Source: Ylistrum balloti (taxonomy: Eukaryota). Taken from it: a DNA stretch of 64,000 nucleotides. Positions within the stretch are counted from its first letter, which is position 1; each line of letters opens with the position of its first letter. The notes below the pieces were generated by a model. The model saw nothing but the letters and a program-made list of their open reading frames with translations. It was not told where the DNA came from and ran no database searches. This document shows, in pieces, positions 56,721 to 64,000 of this stretch. The DNA lies in contig NW_026782138.1 of the NCBI RefSeq assembly GCF_031769215.1, positions 434,001-498,000 of the forward strand, written 5' to 3'. The translations under genes were made by a program, and so were the position numbers.

Positions 56721-57639
56721 AAATCATTATCAATTATGGAATACAAATACACAATCAATTATAAAAATTACTGGTTATGAAATTTTTACCCTTATTTTGT
56801 TACAAGAGTCCTCCCTGTTGGATTGCGATGATGTTCTTGAGTTTCTCAACCTGTTGTACTAATTGATTTACGTCTGCCATATTGATGGATTGATGTTAGT
56901 CAATATGACTGGATTGGAACTGGTGTCAGGTTGTCTGTTGATTTGGAGACAATATTCAATTGATACAGCTTTGACATCACTTTTTGTGTGTTATCTCCAA
57001 CAGCTGTTTTAATACCAAATGAGGCATTAACTTTTGTCTTAACTGGTCATCTGTCAAGTATTCTGGGTTCTCTTCATCCAGTATTTCCCATGATTTAGGT
57101 GGGAGATCTTCTGATGACAAAGATGGAGACAACATTCTCTTGTTCAGTCTTATGGATGAACTTCCTGTCTTTTAACTGTTTAACAGCTCATTGTCTCTTA
57201 ATTTCCGACAACCAACTTAAGGTACTGGTGAAATGATAGTTTTAGTCAAGATGAAAATTACTATGAAGGTGTAATCACGTGATGGATTACATTTGTATAG
57301 GTCACTGCCATTTTTGAAAGTGATGCAGCAAATGTATAAAATCTAAAACTTTTACTGATCATGTGATTATAATGTCAGTATGAAAAATGAGACTAAAAGA
57401 TTGACTTAGCTCTGGTTACAAGTGAGCTACCTGGTTAGTTAACCATCTATGAAAGTTAGCATGACCAGGCTTTAAGAAAATATTAGTAGTGTGCAAATCA
57501 TTGGTTTATCCACACCAACTAAATCTGGTCTGGTATGTGACTTAATTTTTTTATCGAAAGTTTGAAGAATAGATGTACAACATCATCGCAGTTTGATGAA
57601 CTAGGATTTAACAGTTATAAATTCAAAATATTTGAAATC

Positions 57640-58520
57640 CTGGTGTTTTTTGCAATTTATAAGAAATCATATCTTGTTGGCAAATATTATAAAATCCCTG
57701 TCTTGTTTGCAAATCATCTGAAATCCCCATGTTCTTTAAAATAATATCAAATTTGTTGGCAAATGATATCAAATCCCCATCTTGTTGGCGAATCATATGA
57801 AATCCCATCTTGTTGGCATCTTTTTTAGCAAATCATATGAAGTCCCTGTCCTATCGGCAAGTAATATTCAGTTTACAAATATGAAATCTCCTTGTTGGCA
57901 AATGATATAAATATCCCATCTTATTGACAAATCATATGATTTACCCGTCTTGTTGGCAAATTATACCTATTCCCCATCTTGTTGGCAAATTATATAAAAC
58001 TCTTGTTTGCAAATATAAAATCTCTTACTTATTGGCAAAAAATATCCAATTCCCATCTTGTTGGCAAATTACATGAAATCACATCTTGTTGGCAAATTAT
58101 AGAAAATCCCCATCTTGTTGGCAAATTATAGAAAATCACATCTTGTTGGCAAAGCATATGAAATTGCATCTTGTTGGCAAATTATATAAATAAAACCCCT
58201 GTATTGTTGCCAAATAATATAAATGTCCTGTCTTGTTGGCAAATGATAAAAAAACCTTGTCTGGTTGTCAAATAGTATAAAACCCCTGTCTTGTTGGCAT
58301 ATGATATAAATACCCTGTCTTGTTGGCAAATCCTAAGAAATCACATCTTGTTGGCAAATCCTATGAAATCACATCTTGTTGGCTAATCATATGAAATCAC
58401 ATCTTGTTGGCAAATTATAGAAAATCCCAATTTTGTTGGCAAATGATATGGAATTGCATCTTGTTGGCAAATGATATGGAATTGCATCTTGTTGGCAAAT
58501 TAGATCAAATCTCCATCTTG
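57640..58520. repeat. Degenerate ~30-bp minisatellite with core CCCATCTTGTTGGCAAAT
   Basis: Directly visible core repeated with variable linkers. Confidence 0.92.
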
Positions 58521-61500
58521 TTGGAGAATTGTATGACAGGATCATTTTATCTTCTTCCTTAACCAAATTGAGACCTTCATTCAGGATATTGTTGATATGT
58601 TTTTCCTGTTCTTTCACAACGAAATAAATAATGGTTTAATAAATAAGGTTTAATAATAATGTCACGATTTTCTTGTAGAGATTTTAATGCTTCTTGTACA
58701 CTTCCATTAAGTTATTTCTGGTGCTAGTAGGGTTGCTGCCTGCTAAGACAAGTGGTGATGATATTTGTAAAACCCAGAGCTGTATCAAGTTCCCATTTGT
58801 GTTAGAAAGACCTGCATTCAGGAAATCTCTGATCTTTTTCTCTTTTTGTTTTACAGCCTGGTTAAGGTTGGTGATATGAATTTCTGGTAAATGCTTTCAT
58901 TAAAAAGGAAGTTTTTAAAAACAATTTGTAGACAAAACTATTTGTATTACACAGACCTGCATTGAGGATATCTTTGATAATTTTTTCTTTTTATTCCATA
59001 ACAGGCAGATTGTGGTTTTGGTTAAAAAATATCGCACTTTCTTTAGAAAGCTGTAAGGAACCAAAACTTAAAAAAAAATTATTAAATTAATTAAGACTTA
59101 CCTGTCAACTGAAATTTGTACATTATTGTAGTTCTGTCTTTTCTCCTGGTGGTGCAATCTGTTTGAGGATATCCCTGATTTGTTTTACTTCCTTCTTCAC
59201 ACAAAGTGTCCTTGATTTTATCTCCTTTGTCCCTAACAACCAAATTGTGACCTTTATTAAGGTTACCCTTGATATTTTTTTCTTGTTCTTTCATGACAGG
59301 CAGATTGTGGTTTTGGTTAAGAAAATATCACACTTTGTTAGAAAGCTGCTACCCACAAAGACAAGTGGTGATGGTATTTGTAAAACCCTGAGCTGTATCA
59401 AGTTCCCATTTGTGTTTACAAAGACCTGCTTTTACGATCAAAGACCTGCTTTTACGATCAAAGACCTGCTTTTACGATCAAAGACCTGCTTTTAGGATAT
59501 CTGTGATTTTTCTCTCGTCTTGTTTTACAGCCTGGTTAAGTTTGGCGATATGAATTTCTGGTAAATGCTTTCATTAAAAAGGACGTTTTTAAAAATAATT
59601 TGTAGACAAAGCTATTTGTATTACACAGATCTGTTTGAGGATATCCCTGATTTGTTTTACTTCTTTCTTCACACAAAGTGTCCTTGATTTTGATCTTCTT
59701 CTTCCTAAGCAACCGATTTTAATTGAATTGTGACCTTCATTAAGGATATCTTTAATAATTTTTTCTTTTTATTCCATAACAGGCAGATTGTGGTTTTGGT
59801 TAAAAAATATCACACTTTCTTTAAGCTGTAAGGAACCAAAACTTAAAAAAAAATTATTAAATTAATTAAGACTTACCTGTCAACTGAAATTTGTACATTA
59901 TTGTAGTTCTGTCTTTTCTCCTGGTGGTGCAATCTGTTTGAGGATATCCCTGATTTGTTTTACTTCCTTCTTCACACAAAGTGTCCTTGATTTTATCTCC
60001 TTTGTCCTAAACAACCAAATTGTGACCTTTATTAAGGTTACCCTGGATATTATTTTCTTGTTCTTTCATGACAGGCAGATTGTGGTTTTGGTTAAGAAAA
60101 TATCACACTTTTGTTAGTAAGCTGTATGGAACCAAAACTTAAAAAAAAAAAATATTAAATTAATTGAGACTTTCCTGTCAACTGAAATTTGTACATTATT
60201 GTAGTTCTGTCTTTTCTCCTGGTGGTGCTATCTGTTTGAGGATATCCCTGATTTATTTTACTTCTTTCTTCACACGAAGTGTCCTGATTTGATCTCCTTT
60301 GTCCTTAACAACCAAATTGTGACCTTCATTAAGGTTAGCCTTGATATTTTTTTCTTGTTCTTCCATGATAAGCAGATTGTGGTTTTGGTTAAAAAATATC
60401 ACACTTTCGTTAGAAAGCTGCTACCCACAAAGACAAGTGGTGATGGTATTTGTAAAACCCTGAGCTGTATCTAGTTCCCATTTGTGTTAGAAAGACCTGC
60501 ATTCAGGAAATCTCTGATCTTTTTCTCTTTTTGTTTTACAGCCTGGTTAAGGTTGGTGATATGAATTTCTGGTAAATACTTTCATTAAAAAGGAAGTTTT
60601 TAAAAACAATTTGTAGACAAAACTATTTGTATTACACAGACCTGCATTGAGGATATCTTTGATAATTTTTTCTTTTTATTCCATAACAGGCAGATTGTGG
60701 TTTTGGTTAAAAAATATCACACTTTCTTTAGAAAGCTGTAAGGAACCAAAACTTAAAAAAAAATTATTAAATTAATTAATACTTACCTGTCAACTGAAAT
60801 TTGTACATTATTGTAGTTCTGTCTTTTCTCCTGGTGGTGCAATCTGTTTGAGGATATCCCTGATTTGTTTTACTTCCTTCTTCACACAAAGTGTCCTTGA
60901 TTTTATCTCCTTTGTCCTTAACAACCAAATTGTGACCTTTATTAAGGTTACCCTGGATATTATTTTCTTGTTCTTTCATGACAGGCAGATTGTGGTTTTG
61001 GTTAAGAAAATATCACACTTTTGTTAGAAAGCTGCTACCCACAAAGACAAGTGGTGATGGTATTTGTAAAACCCTGAGCTGTATCAAGTTCCCATTTGTG
61101 TTTACAAAGACCTGCTTTTAGGATATCTGTGATTTTTCTCTCGTCTTGTTTTACAGCCTGGTTAAGTTTGGCGATATGAATTTCTGGTAAATGCTTTCAT
61201 TAAAAAGGACGTTTTTAAAAATAATTTGTAGACAAAGCTATTTGTATTACACAGATCTGTTTGAGGATATCCCTGATTTGTTTTACTTCTTTCTTCACAC
61301 AAAGTGTCCTTGATTTTATCTTCTTCTTCCTAAGCAACCGATTTTAATTGAATTGTGACCTTCATTAAGGATATCTTTAATAATTTTTTCTTTTTATTCC
61401 ATAACAGGCAGATTGTTGTTTTGGTTAAAAAATATCACACTTTCTTTAGAAAGCTGTAAGGAACCAAAACTTAAAAAAAAATCATTAAATTAATTAAGAC

Positions 61501-64000
61501 TTACCTGTCAACTGAAATTTGTACATTATTGTAGTTCTGTCTTTTCTCCTGGTGGTGCAATCTGTTTGAGGATATCCCTGATTTGTTTTACTTCTTTCTT
61601 CACACAAAGTGTCCTTGATTTTATCTTCTTCTTCCTAAGCAACCGATTTTAATTGAATTGTGACCTTCATTAAGGATATCTTTAATAATTTTTTCTTTTT
61701 ATTCCATAACAGGCAGATTGTTGTTTTGGTTAAAAAATATCACACTTTCTTTAGAAAGCTGTAAGGAACCAAAACTTAAAAAAAATCATTAAATTAATTA
61801 AGACTTACCTGTCAACTGAAATTTGTACATTATTGTAGTTCTGTCTTTTCTCCTGGTGGTGCAATCTGTTTGAGGATAACCCTGATTTGTTTTACTTCTT
61901 TCTTCACACAAAGTGTCCTTGATTTTATCTCCTTTGTCCTTAACAACCAAATTGTGACCTTCATTAAGGTTAGCCTGGATATTATTTTCTTGTTCTTTCA
62001 TGACAGGCAGATTGTGGTTTTGGTTAAGAAAATATCACACTTTCGTTAGAAAGCTGCTACCCACAAAGACAAGTGGTGATGGTATTTGTAAAACCCTGAG
62101 CTGTATCAAGTTCCCATTTGTGTTAGAAAGACCTGCATTCAGGAAATCTCTGATCTTTTTCTCTTTTTGTTTTACAGCCTGGTTAAGGTTGGTGATATGA
62201 ATTTCTGGTAAATACTTTCATTAAAAAGGAAGTTTTTAAAAACAATTTGTAGACAAAACTATTTGTATTACACAGACCTGCATTGAGGATATCTTTGATA
62301 ATTTTTTCTTTTTATTCCATAACAGGCAGATTGTTGTTTTGGTTAAAAAATATCACACTTTCTTTAGAAAGCTGTAAGGAACCAAAACTTAAAAAAAATC
62401 ATTAAATTAATTAAGACTTACCTGTCAACTGAAATTTGTACATTATTGTAGTTCTGTCTTTTCTCCTGGTGGTGCAATCTGTTTGAGGATAACCCTGATT
62501 TGTTTTACTTCTTTCTTCACACAAAGTGTCCTTGATTTTATCTCCTTTGTCCTTAACAACCAAATTGTGACCTTCATTAAGGTTAGCCTGGATATTATTT
62601 TCTTGTTCTTTCATGACAGGCAGATTGTGGTTTTGGTTAAGAAAATATCACACTTTCGTTAGAAAGCTGCTACCCACAAAGACAAGTGGTGATGGTATTT
62701 GTAAAACCCTGAGCTGTATCAAGTTCCCATTTGTGTTAGAAAGACCTGCATTCAGGAAATCTCTGATCTTTTTCTCTTTTTGTTTTACAGCCTGGTTAAG
62801 GTTGGTGATATGAATTTCTGGTAAATACTTTCATTAAAAAGGAAGTTTTTAAAAACAATTTGTAGACAAAACTATTTGTATTACACAGACCTGCATTGAG
62901 GATATCTTTGATAATTTTTTCTTTTTATTCCATAACAGGCAGATTGTTGTTTTGGTTAAAAAATATCACACTTTCTTTAGAAAGCTGTAAGGAACCAAAA
63001 CTTAAAAAAAAATTATTAAATTAATTAAGACTTACCTGTCAACTGAAATTTGTACATTATTGTAGTTCTGTCTTTTCTCCTGGCGGTGCAATCTGTTTGA
63101 GGATATCCCTGATTTGTTTTACTTCCTTCTTCACACAAAGTGTCCTTGATTTTATCTCCTTTGTCCTTAACAACCAAATTGTGACCTTTATTAAGGTTAC
63201 CCTTGATATTATTTTCTTGTTCTTTCATGACAGGCAGATTGTGGTTTTGGTTAAGAAAATATCACACTTTGTTAGAAAGCTGCTACCCACAAAGACAAGT
63301 GGTGATGGTATTTGTAAAACCCTGAGCTGTATCAAGTTCCCATTTGTGTTTACAAAGACCTGCTTTTACGATCAAAGACCTGCTTTTAGGATATCTGTGA
63401 TTTTTCTCTCGTCTTGTTTTACAGCCTGGTTAAGTTTGGCGATATGAATTTCTGGTAAATGCTTTCATTAAAAAGGACGTTTTTAAAAATAATTTGTAGA
63501 CAAAGCTATTTGTATTACACAGATCTGTTTGAGGATATCCCTGATTTGTTTTACTTCTTTCTTCACACAAAGTGTCCTTGATTTTATCTTCTTCTTCCTA
63601 AGCAACCGATTTTAATTGAATTGTGACCTTCATTAAGGATATCTTTAATAATTTTTTCTTTTTATTCCATAACAGGCAGATTGTTGTTTTGGTTAAAAAA
63701 TATCACACTTTCTTTAGAAAGCTGTAAGGAACCAAAACTTAAAAAAAAATCATTAAATTAATTAAGACTTACCTGTCAACTGAAATTTGTACATTATTGT
63801 AGTTCTGTCGTTTCTCCTGGTGGTGCAATCTGTTTGAGGATATCCCTGATTTGTTTTACTTCCTTCTTCACACAAAGTGTCCTTGATTTTATCTTCTTCT
63901 TCCTAAGCAACCGATTTTAATTGAATTGTGACCTTCATTAAGGATATCTTTAATAATTTTTTCTTTTTATTCCATAACAGGCAGATTGTTGTTTTGGTTA
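58520..64000 (-). repeat. Mosaic macro-repeat (periods about 300, 613 and 720-775 bp) running off the window end
   Basis: Shared module marker CTTACCTGTC at 59097, 59872, 60170 (mutated), 60782, 61500, 61804, 62417, 63031 and 63768; near-identical 67-aa ORFs recur in the ORF track. Confidence 0.97.

What the first reader, a model, noticed from the sequence alone, without database searches (positions are those of the whole stretch)
58520..64000. Macro-satellite built from a fossil repeat protein: sub-units translate to KxxEKxIxDILNxGL with synonymous codon variation
Minus-strand sub-repeats read KEQEKHINNILNEGL, KEQEKNIKGNLNKGH, KQKEKKIRDFLNAGL, *KEKIIKDILNAGL, KQDERKITDILKAGL, *KEKIIKDILNEGH and KEVKQIRDILKQI. 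The central Leu uses all four CTN codons (CTG, CTT, CTC, CTA) across sub-types, which points to past protein-level selection on an amphipathic helical repeat. Present units contain stops and frameshifts and were later amplified at high identity. Inference: a gene-derived satellite from an unrecognised repeat-protein family.
Basis: partly seen in the sequence, partly recalled or inferred. Interest (0 to 1): 0.7.

Follow-up and report, generated by a model that had tools for sequence, protein, structure and literature searches.

The report
Satellite seeded by death-effector-domain exon end
A 25-kb, single-locus tandem repeat in a scallop genome is built around about 120 decayed copies of a 57-base piece that matches the end of the coding exon of a death-effector-domain (cell-death adaptor) gene family, so it is gene-derived non-coding DNA and not the remains of an unknown repeat protein.

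Summary
Window 58520-64000 is the start of a complex tandem array of ~300-nt units of four types, in higher-order repeats of 613 and ~1020 nt. Its minus strand carries the quoted K..EK.I.DIL peptides, and the Leu codon is CTT, CTG, CTC, CTA or TTG.

The array runs ~20 kb past the window, to C281:518,012. It has ~16.4 kb of repeat in five blocks split by transposon insertions, and about 120 motif copies. It exists only at this locus.

A profile of the 20-residue motif, searched six-frame in the genome, hits the last ~16 codons of small ORFs outside the array. These ORFs form a family of ~17 and encode a death effector domain (DED). Support: Pfam DED, AlphaFold model with pLDDT 92.7, and FADD, caspase-8 and PEA-15 DEDs as best structural matches.

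- DNA identity between exon end and sub-repeat is 77-89% over 44-62 nt.
- The reciprocal genome-wide search finds only the paralogues and this array (E 1.5e-7).
- hhalign gives 91.7% probability.

So the sub-repeat is gene-derived, but from a non-repetitive DED exon end. No repeat protein exists.

Present copies evolve neutrally (3 synonymous, 14 non-synonymous, 1 stop). Open frames are equally common on both strands. The third-codon-position excess among sub-types is marginal. RNA evidence could not be obtained.

The parts
58520..64000 (-). Part of the tandem array that lies in the window. It continues to C281:518,012, which is 20 kb beyond the window end.
   Evidence: Repeat families with 295-320 nt spacing and 613/~1020 nt higher-order periods. 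Extent from BLAST of the array against window plus flank. Unit map.
62054..62371 (-). Example of unit type 'Hdet': shared 112-nt head, sub-repeat d, spacer, sub-repeat e, tail segment t.
   Evidence: Unit map; sequence read.
61759..62053 (-). Example of unit type 'Habci': head, sub-repeats a, b, c, then an intron-like segment.
   Evidence: Unit map; sequence. The a-to-b spacing is 57 nt (in frame) and the b-to-c spacing is 37 nt (counted on the sequence).
62558..62617 (-). Sub-repeat type A (VMKEQENNIQANLNEGHNLV). It is the closest array type to the DED exon ends of the C493/C1114 group.
   Evidence: The older variant of this type differs at 8-9 of 48 nt from DED tails and is 89% identical over 44 nt.
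62501..62560 (-). Sub-repeat type B (VVKDKGDKIKDTLCEERSKT), 57 nt after A in the same frame.
63815..63874 (-). Sub-repeat type C (CVKKEVKQIRDILKQIAPPG), frame-shifted relative to B.
62877..62924 (-). Sub-repeat type D (KEKIIKDILNAGLCNT), preceded by an in-frame TAA.
62732..62791 (-). Sub-repeat type E (AVKQKEKKIRDFLNAGLSNT).
   Evidence: It is 80% identical over 46 nt to the C1129 DED tail.
63375..63425 (-). Sub-repeat type F (AVKQDERKITDILKAGL).
63919..63966 (-). Sub-repeat type G (KEKIIKDILNEGHNSI).
   Evidence: It is 86% identical over 44 nt to the C551 DED tail and 77% over 62 nt to the C320 DED tail.
58561..58620 (-). Edge copy of the sub-repeat (VVKEQEKHINNILNEGLNLV), the last copy before the flanking minisatellite.
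62411..62614 (-). One of at least 16 copies of a 67-codon ATG ORF that spans sub-repeats a and b.
   Evidence: Substitutions among 12 distinct copies are 3 synonymous, 14 non-synonymous and 1 stop, against a neutral expectation of 22/73/5%. No Pfam family passes its cut-off.
62372..62421 (-). 50-nt intron look-alike (CAG|GTAAGT ... TTCCTTACAG|) present in the 'Habci' and 'Hgbci' units.
   Evidence: Read directly. All three frames of the following segment hit a stop within 30 nt, so it does not join coding exons. Unexplained.
59419..59498 (.). Local 20-nt minisatellite (4 copies) that grew inside one F-type copy.
57626..58524 (.). 29-nt minisatellite abutting the array edge. It is not part of the array family.
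   Evidence: It is unique to this locus in the genome.

Best explanation
This is a locus-specific, non-coding macrosatellite. A short piece of genomic DNA, the last ~50-60 nt of a death-effector-domain (DED) coding exon, came to lie at this site on contig C281. The piece holds the purine-rich codons for the end of helix 6 and the conserved AG|GT that follows them. It was duplicated in tandem as a 57-nt sub-repeat; the a-b-c triplet still shows spacings of 57 and 37 nt. It became embedded in ~300-nt units together with sequence of unknown origin. Unequal crossing-over between the sub-repeats then produced four recombinant unit types and higher-order repeats of 613 and ~1020 nt, which were amplified recently.

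Shown: the array structure, its restriction to one locus, homology to the DED exon end, neutral change in present copies, and TE insertions in the older distal part. Inferred: the direction gene-to-array, the order of events, and unequal crossing-over as the engine. The array most likely has no protein product today.
For: Structure.

Single locus: all 42 six-frame hits of the 67-aa ORF and about 125 of 134 motif-profile hits lie in C281:492-518 kb.

Homology to the DED exon:
- The best non-array hits of the motif profile are the ORF ends of C320, C30, C493, C1114, C1364 and C551.
- These ORFs hit Pfam DED. 12 of 14 members hit at E<=0.01, the best at 1e-8 and 35.7 bits against a cut-off of 35.9.
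- The family profile hits cFLIP and caspase-8 DEDs in the PDB.
- The AF2 model has pLDDT 92.7 and six helices. Its top 40 structural matches are all DEDs, with TM 0.66-0.84.
- DNA identity is 77-89% over 44-62 nt for ten family members.
- The reciprocal search with the 71-nt ORF end finds only paralogues plus the array, at a genome-wide E of 1.5e-7.
- hhalign gives 91.7% probability and E 7.6e-7, aligned to the family's C-terminus.

Direction: the tail is kept in paralogues only 33-39% identical in the DED body. Its first residues lie inside the Pfam DED match and inside predicted helix 81-102.

No present coding function: neutral substitution spectrum; open frames of 60 aa or more number 40 on the minus and 38 on the plus strand, and the longest (146 aa) is on the plus strand.

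Recombination between sub-repeats: the 'c' core is joined directly to the spacer that follows 'd' in the 'Hgbcft' units.

Age gradient: the proximal block is 97-100% alike, while the distal blocks are 84-96% alike and broken by TE-like inserts.
Against: Only ~50-60 nt of each ~300-nt unit can be traced to the DED exon. The origin of the head, spacers and intron-like segment is unknown. A DED-body profile scores no better on the array than on random windows, and upstream extension of the homology is inconsistent. Different array sub-types resemble different paralogues: the KNIQG type resembles C493/C1114, and the K.IKD type resembles C551/C320. A single capture followed by neutral drift does not predict this pattern. 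It could mean several captures, gene conversion, or chance. No RNA data could be obtained, so transcription or small-RNA production is not excluded. No TE or satellite library (Dfam, Repbase, published scallop satellites) was available.
Confidence: 0.75

Rival explanations
1. One reading: the array is the wreck of a gene for an unrecognised repeat protein made of tandem amphipathic K..EK.I.DILN.G helices, later amplified as DNA.
For: a and b lie 57 nt apart in one frame. In-frame pN/pS is 0.53-0.58 against 0.85-0.96 out of frame. There is a third-position excess. The parental stretch is predicted helical.
Against: In all intact relatives the motif occurs once, at the end of a DED ORF. No multi-copy protein appears in the genome's six frames. 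The word search and the exact look-up found nothing. The search of 1.84 billion representatives gave two hits, both bacterial adhesins whose score is summed over identical repeats. Other spacings are 37 nt or irregular. The codon-position signal has p 0.06-0.2 after correction.
Confidence: 0.07
2. The array is functional through RNA or peptides. One version is a Su(Ste)-like source of small RNAs against the DED paralogues, or a sponge for factors that bind the purine-rich exon end and 5' splice site. Another version is a battery of 66-67-aa micro-proteins that mimic the DED tail.
For: At least 16 copies keep the 67-codon ATG ORF open. A 27-nt exact match exists between the older A-type copies and the C1114 exon end (alignment). 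The strictly one-stranded orientation of about 120 copies would give a uniform transcript.
Against: The substitution spectrum of the ORF copies is neutral. ORFs are equally frequent on the other strand. There is no Pfam match or signal.
Confidence: 0.08
3. The array is the internal tandem repeat of a transposable element, as in tandem-repeat-bearing MITEs or Helentron-linked bivalve satellites. The likeness to DED genes would come from gene capture by that element, or from chance.
For: A ~330-nt dispersed repeat abuts the array at C281:507,761-508,098 and 518,013-518,321 in inverted orientation. The surroundings are TE-rich. Tandem-repeat-bearing MITEs are described in bivalves (PMC3879986, abstract).
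Against: The array sequence occurs nowhere else in the 648-Mb assembly. The two flanking copies are 80% alike but each is 95-98% like copies elsewhere, so they are separate insertions and not the two ends of one element. Other copies of that repeat carry no array sequence.
Confidence: 0.05
4. Reverse direction: the DED genes gained their C-terminal tail by taking up a piece of this repeat.
For: Homology alone has no direction. The tail shows twice the synonymous divergence of the DED body among close paralogues (pS 0.278 against 0.133).
Against: The tail is present in paralogues that are only 33-39% identical. It is continuous with DED helix 6. The array is confined to one locus and its bulk is young.
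Confidence: 0.03

Closest known systems
Macrosatellites: locus-specific tandem arrays with units of hundreds of nt to kb, some built from gene or retrogene copies (human D4Z4, RS447, CT47 and others; PMC3018141 and PMC5687341, abstracts; details from my own knowledge)
   Same: Confined to one locus, head-to-tail, tens of kb long, with short ORFs inside the units, higher-order structure and recent homogenisation.
   Different: The units are smaller (~300 nt; higher-order 0.6-1 kb). Only a ~57-nt exon-end fragment is traceable, not a whole gene, and that fragment recurs 2-3 times per unit.
Drosophila Stellate / Su(Ste) arrays (PMC7874207, abstract; the origin from a CK2-beta-like gene is from my own knowledge)
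   Same: A tandem array descended from protein-coding sequence that still shares stretches of identity with dispersed or clustered parent genes.
   Different: No evidence here of antisense transcription or piRNAs. The derived part is a small fragment. Function is not shown.
Bivalve TE-associated satellites and tandem-repeat-bearing MITEs (for example DTC84 of Donax, PMC3879986; TE-to-tandem-repeat conversions reviewed in PMC6947457)
   Same: Bivalve host, a tandem repeat with internal sub-repeats, and TE-rich surroundings.
   Different: Those repeats are dispersed at many loci and bounded by element termini. This one is single-locus and its recognisable core comes from a host gene exon.
Cf303 satellite of Chlamys farreri (PMC5904364)
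   Same: A scallop satellite whose name suggests a ~300-bp unit. That the name reflects unit length is my assumption.
   Different: By FISH, Cf303 lies on the centromere of one pair and on the long-arm telomeric regions of 13-14 pairs. This array is at one interstitial locus.
DED proteins FADD, PEA-15 and caspase-8/cFLIP DEDs (the parent of the sub-repeat, not of the array)
   Same: The parent ORFs have the six-helix DED fold. One divergent member (C85) has a Death-domain ORF 1.4 kb downstream on the same strand, as in FADD.
   Different: The closest parents are ~103-codon ORFs with no second exon found within 1.5 kb. Whether they are DED-only proteins or first exons spliced at the conserved AG|GTRAG was not resolved.

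Membership tests
Satellite / macrosatellite DNA | Head-to-tail tandem units, all in one orientation | tested here: met
   (all matches on one strand).
Satellite / macrosatellite DNA | Higher-order repeat structure with recent homogenisation | tested here: met
   613 and ~1011-1021 nt spacings with copies 97-100% alike. The distal block has its own ~1460-nt period.
Satellite / macrosatellite DNA | No protein-coding constraint on present copies | tested here: met
   3 synonymous, 14 non-synonymous and 1 stop against a neutral 22/73/5%. Open frames number 40 minus and 38 plus.
Satellite / macrosatellite DNA | Restricted to one locus (macrosatellite) rather than many chromosomes (classical satellite) | tested here: met
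   All hits lie in C281:492-518 kb, within the limits of one assembly.
   Relatives carry one copy each.
   a-b is 57 nt, but b-c is 37 nt and the other spacings are irregular. The motif is spread over all three frames.
   pN/pS is 0.53-0.58 in frame against 0.85-0.96 out of frame. The position-3 excess has p 0.06-0.2 after correction.
Derivative of a DED (PF01335) gene | Significant sequence homology to members of the gene family | tested here: met
   The homology covers only the last ~16 codons plus ~20 nt.
Derivative of a DED (PF01335) gene | The array keeps the DED domain itself | tested here: not met
   The full family HMM matches the array only at positions ~85-106. The body-only HMM scores 3 bits or less, within the range of random windows.
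Parent ORFs as DED proteins | Pfam DED match and six-helix death fold | tested here: met
   12 of 14 members at E<=0.01, the best at 35.7 bits, just under the 35.9 cut-off. PDB profile hits to cFLIP. AF2 model with pLDDT 92.7. DED structures fill the top of the fold search, with weak E-values for this small domain.
TE-borne bivalve satellite / tandem-repeat MITE | Many dispersed copies bounded by element termini | tested here: not met
TE-borne bivalve satellite / tandem-repeat MITE | Match to a curated TE or satellite consensus | not testable with these tools
   No Dfam/Repbase or mollusc satellite library was on hand. Rfam gave no hit.
Su(Ste)-like small-RNA-producing array | Transcription and small RNAs antisense to the parent genes | not testable with these tools
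The read-laying tool was therefore not used.

The most novel reading that the evidence does not exclude
The array is not inert. Its ~120 one-stranded variant cassettes of the DED exon end interact with the dispersed DED paralogues in one of two ways. It could be a Su(Ste)-like source of small RNAs, since a 27-nt exact match to a paralogue exists. Or it could be a donor reservoir for gene conversion that diversifies the C-terminal helix of a fast-evolving cell-death or immune adaptor family. The conversion idea would explain two things: different cassette types mirror different paralogues, and the tail shows twice the synonymous divergence of the DED body.
Probability: 0.06. Interest if true: 0.75.

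Novelty: new member of a known kind. Interest (0 to 1): 0.36.

Why it matters
It gives a clean, dated-in-principle example of how a satellite can be seeded. A ~57-nt exon-end fragment of a host gene was first duplicated as a minisatellite, then packed into ~300-nt units and higher-order repeats by unequal exchange. The origins of satellites are rarely traceable, and in molluscs the known cases lead to transposons. It also brings to light a family of about 17 small DED-encoding ORFs in a scallop, with a conserved helical tail that overlaps a possible splice donor. That family is relevant to the expansion of cell-death and immune adaptors in bivalves. For the scan, it shows that codon-like variation in a repeat can be a true trace of coding ancestry even when the parent protein is not itself repetitive.

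Tried and rejected
1. Live multi-exon gene. The canonical-looking acceptor and donor around each unit cannot join coding exons. All three frames stop within 30 nt of the acceptor, and the 245-nt segment is not a multiple of three.

2. Relatives of the 67-aa ORF. Pfam shows only sub-threshold noise. The word search found nothing. The exact look-up found nothing.

3. Search of 1.84 billion representatives. It gave two hits, rejected as spurious. Both are bacterial adhesin-type proteins, and the score is the sum of 4-7 identical repeats each matching a short NLN.G.NLV.KD.G string.

4. Rfam: no hit.

5. Cf303 satellite.

6. Long terminal inverted repeat around the distal block. Rejected, because the two copies belong to different sub-families of a dispersed ~330-nt repeat.

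7. Extension of homology upstream of the tail. The result is inconsistent, with p from 0.004 to 0.93 across paralogues.

8. Whole-exon origin of the ~300-nt unit. The unit length is close to the 309-nt DED ORF, but the body HMM scores 3.3 bits or less, the same as random windows.

9. The 25-nt minisatellite downstream of the C493-type DED ORFs looks like the reverse of the array core. This is not significant (p 0.10).

10. Second exon of the DED ORFs. tblastx of 1.5-kb downstream flanks shows only frame-independent DNA similarity. A Death-domain ORF follows only the divergent C85 member.

11. Homologues of the DED family in the word-indexed protein collection. None were found in the allowed length range, and the exact sequences are not held there. 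This blank says little.

12. Steps that did not run.
- The short sub-type strings used in scripts were the consensus lines printed.
Full report
**Location and extent.** The window is G000:C281:434,001-498,000 of a 648-Mb assembly. Earlier notes of this scan call the organism a scallop; I did not test that. From window base 58520 to the window end the DNA is a complex tandem repeat. Repeat families recur every 295-320 nt and share a 112-nt head. Longer registers of 613 and about 1011-1021 nt have copies 97-100% alike.

I fetched the next 40 kb. The array runs without a break to C281:503,395. It then continues in four more blocks up to C281:518,012, separated by 1-4-kb inserts with transposon-like ORFs. 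In all there is about 16.4 kb of repeat within 25.5 kb.

A feature map resolves four unit types, reading the minus strand:
- 'Habci'
- 'Hdet'
- 'Hgbci'
- 'Hgbcft'

H is the shared head, a-g are copies of the motif, i is an intron-like segment and t is a tail segment. In the 'Hgbcft' type the core of copy c is fused to the spacer that normally follows copy d. Exchange between sub-repeats would produce exactly this.

**The observation.** A loose pattern for the motif core matches 120 times on the minus strand and never on the plus strand. The matches are spread over all three frames because unit lengths are not multiples of three. The aligned Leu codon is CTT, CTG, TTG, CTC, CTC, CTG or CTA in the seven sub-type consensus sequences.

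**Is it coding now?** No.
- Stop-to-stop frames of 60 aa or more number 40 on the minus and 38 on the plus strand, and the longest (146 aa) is on the plus strand.
- A 67-codon ATG ORF spans copies a and b and is open in at least 16 units. Its 12 distinct versions differ by 3 synonymous, 14 non-synonymous and 1 stop change. Neutral expectation is 22/73/5%.
- The tidy splice-like sites cannot join coding exons, because all three frames stop within 30 nt after the acceptor. The sites are CAG|GTAAGT, 50 nt, then TTCCTTACAG|.
- Pfam, the word-indexed protein search and an exact look-up found nothing for this ORF.

**Codon-level signal among the old sub-types.** The sub-types align without gaps over 18 codons.
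- Mean pairwise difference by codon position is 0.34/0.29/0.46.
It gives 0.06-0.2 once the choice among three frames is allowed for.
- Pooled pN/pS is 0.53-0.58 in that frame and 0.85-0.96 in the other two.

This is suggestive but weak, since it rests on 17 codons and four to seven sequences that are not independent.

**Where the motif comes from.** I built a profile of the 20-residue motif (alignment A1) and searched the genome in six frames. About 125 hits fall in the array. The best hits elsewhere are weak one by one (E 0.04-2). Six of the top eight fall at the same place in the same kind of gene: the last ~16 codons of small ORFs on contigs C320, C30, C493, C1114, C1364 and C551.

Using one of these ORFs as query finds a family of about 17 loci on different contigs, none on C281. 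The ORFs have 103-117 codons.
- 12 of 14 hit Pfam DED (PF01335) at E<=0.01. The best is 1e-8 at 35.7 bits, just under the 35.9-bit cut-off, and covers profile positions 6-80 of 82.
- Their profile finds cFLIP and caspase-8 DEDs among solved structures.
- An AlphaFold model has mean pLDDT 92.7 and six helices.
- Its best structural matches are FADD, caspase-8/cFLIP, PEA-15 and MC159 DEDs. TM-scores normalised by target reach 0.78-0.84 and rmsd is about 2 A. The E-values are weak, as expected for an 80-residue domain.

The family alignment (A2) ends in a conserved tail of the form V-x-E-x-E-K-x-I-x-[GD]-I-L-N-x-G-E-N. This tail lies in the predicted last helix, residues 81-102.

**Strength of the link.**
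- At DNA level the tails of ten family members match array sub-repeats at 77-89% identity over 44-62 nt, and nothing else in 3.3 kb around each gene matches.
- One alignment contains a 27-nt exact run.
- The reciprocal genome-wide DNA search with the 71-nt ORF end of the C1114 copy returns only five paralogues and three array positions (E 1.5e-7, 89% over 44 nt).
- Profile-profile comparison of A1 with A2 aligns the motif to the family's C-terminus with 91.7% probability and E 7.6e-7.
- The full family HMM matches the translated array only on the minus strand and essentially only at positions ~85-106.

The sub-repeat is therefore homologous to the end of a DED-coding exon.

**What is not shown.** Homology does not detectably extend further.
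- A body-only DED profile scores at most 3.3 bits on the stretches upstream of the array motifs. That is the same as the 99th percentile of random windows on either strand.
- Nucleotide extension upstream is inconsistent among paralogues.
- The head, spacers and intron-like segment have no match elsewhere in the genome.

Their origin is open.

**Direction and mechanism.** The tail is present in paralogues whose DED bodies are only 33-39% identical. It is continuous with the domain's last helix. The array is confined to one locus and is mostly young. I therefore infer gene-to-array.

The invariant Gly of the tail sits in AG|GTGAG or AG|GTAAG in every member, which is a good 5' splice-site consensus. 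The array copies keep the AG|GT and about 20 nt beyond it. That points to capture of genomic DNA rather than a processed transcript, if the site is a real donor.

Whether the parents are DED-only proteins or first exons is unresolved.
- One divergent member on C85 has a Death-domain ORF 1.4 kb downstream on the same strand, which is FADD-like.
- For the close relatives I found no conserved second exon within 1.5 kb.
- A wider fetch was not possible.

The a-b-c triplet, with spacings of 57 and 37 nt, looks like the remnant of an initial 57-nt minisatellite. The recombinant unit types and nested periodicities fit growth by unequal exchange. These steps are inference.

**An unexplained pattern.** Array sub-types resemble different paralogues. 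The A type (..EQEKNIQG..) is nearest the C493/C1114 group, at 8-9 differences in 48 nt. The D and G types (..KEKIIKD..) are nearest C551 and C320, at 9-11. The E type is nearest C1129, at 12.

Among close paralogues the tail has twice the synonymous divergence of the DED body (pS 0.278 against 0.133). Its in-frame pN/pS is 0.52-0.56, much like that among the array sub-types.

Several captures, gene conversion between array and genes, or chance parallelism through single-base changes could each explain this. The data cannot decide. This pattern is the basis of the low-probability novel case.

**Rivals.**
- A fossil repeat protein is disfavoured, because every intact relative has one copy of the motif. 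The only hits in 1.84 billion representative proteins are two bacterial adhesins with scores summed over identical repeats.
- A TE-borne satellite is disfavoured by the single-locus distribution. The two inverted ~330-nt repeats that abut the distal block are independent insertions: they are 80% alike, while each is 95-98% like copies elsewhere.
- The published scallop satellite Cf303 has a many-chromosome distribution.

**Limits.** No TE or satellite library and no other mollusc genome were available. The protein collections do not hold this genome's proteins, so blanks there say little about mollusc relatives. Copy numbers depend on one assembly.

**Verdict.** The thing is a single-locus macrosatellite whose recurring core is a decayed copy of a DED exon end. 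It is a new example of a known kind of event (gene-fragment-seeded tandem DNA), of moderate interest.

Noticed in passing
window 57626-58524: A 29-nt minisatellite (about 30 copies, 67-75% matches) abuts the array's edge. In the genome search it matches only its own locus.
   Followed up: partly
window 62372-62421 and every 'Habci'/'Hgbci' unit (minus strand): A textbook 50-nt mini-intron look-alike: CAG|GTAAGT ... polypyrimidine ... TTACAG|. No open frame crosses it. Its origin and meaning are unknown.
   Followed up: partly
L057-L075 (contigs C493, C844, C551, C713, C1325, C320, C30, C879, C15, C105, C85, C903, C635, C366 and others): A family of about 17 small ORFs of 103-136 codons encodes a death effector domain with a conserved helical tail. 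The invariant Gly of the tail lies in AG|GTRAG, a possible conserved splice donor. pN/pS among the five closest members is 0.71. None of the ten sequences looked up is in the public protein collection.
   Followed up: partly
G000:C85:2213140-2215433 (minus): The most divergent member of that family has an ORF with two Death-domain hits (35.4 and 30.4 bits) 1.4 kb downstream on the same strand. This is a FADD-like arrangement.
   Followed up: no
L069 (C1114) and L070 (C1364): Two 5'-truncated copies of the DED ORF keep only the last ~33 codons, directly behind a (CA)n(AG)n microsatellite. They share flanks with the intact C493 gene.
   Followed up: partly
L057:2301-3312 (C493), also in L069 and L070: A 25-nt minisatellite of at least 40 copies lies 480 nt downstream of the DED ORF. 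Its likeness to the reverse of the array core is at chance level (p 0.10).
   Followed up: yes
C281:507,761-508,098 and 518,013-518,321 (L013-L015): A ~330-nt dispersed repeat (at least 12 genomic copies, some as direct pairs 3.5-5.5 kb apart) sits in inverted orientation exactly at two array boundaries. A 27-nt fragment of its end recurs at a third boundary (C281:516,944-516,970).
   Followed up: partly
C281:519,023-519,454 (minus; L015:1023-1454): A 144-codon ORF has a weak BEN-domain match (E 6e-4, under the cut-off). It is preceded by an acceptor-like site and by a possible upstream exon at L015:1802-2083. It lies 1 kb from the array end.
   Followed up: no
C281:504,711-504,965; 506,553-507,200; 515,608-516,597; 524,502-524,807 (minus): Four TE-like ORFs in 30 kb start with the same motif (basic run, then PYD..LENW). 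They look like members of one element family that inserted repeatedly in and around the array.
   Followed up: no
window 59419-59498 and 63353-63392: A 20-nt unit inside the F-type copy has expanded to 4 copies at one site and 2 at the other. A new minisatellite is being born inside the satellite.
   Followed up: no
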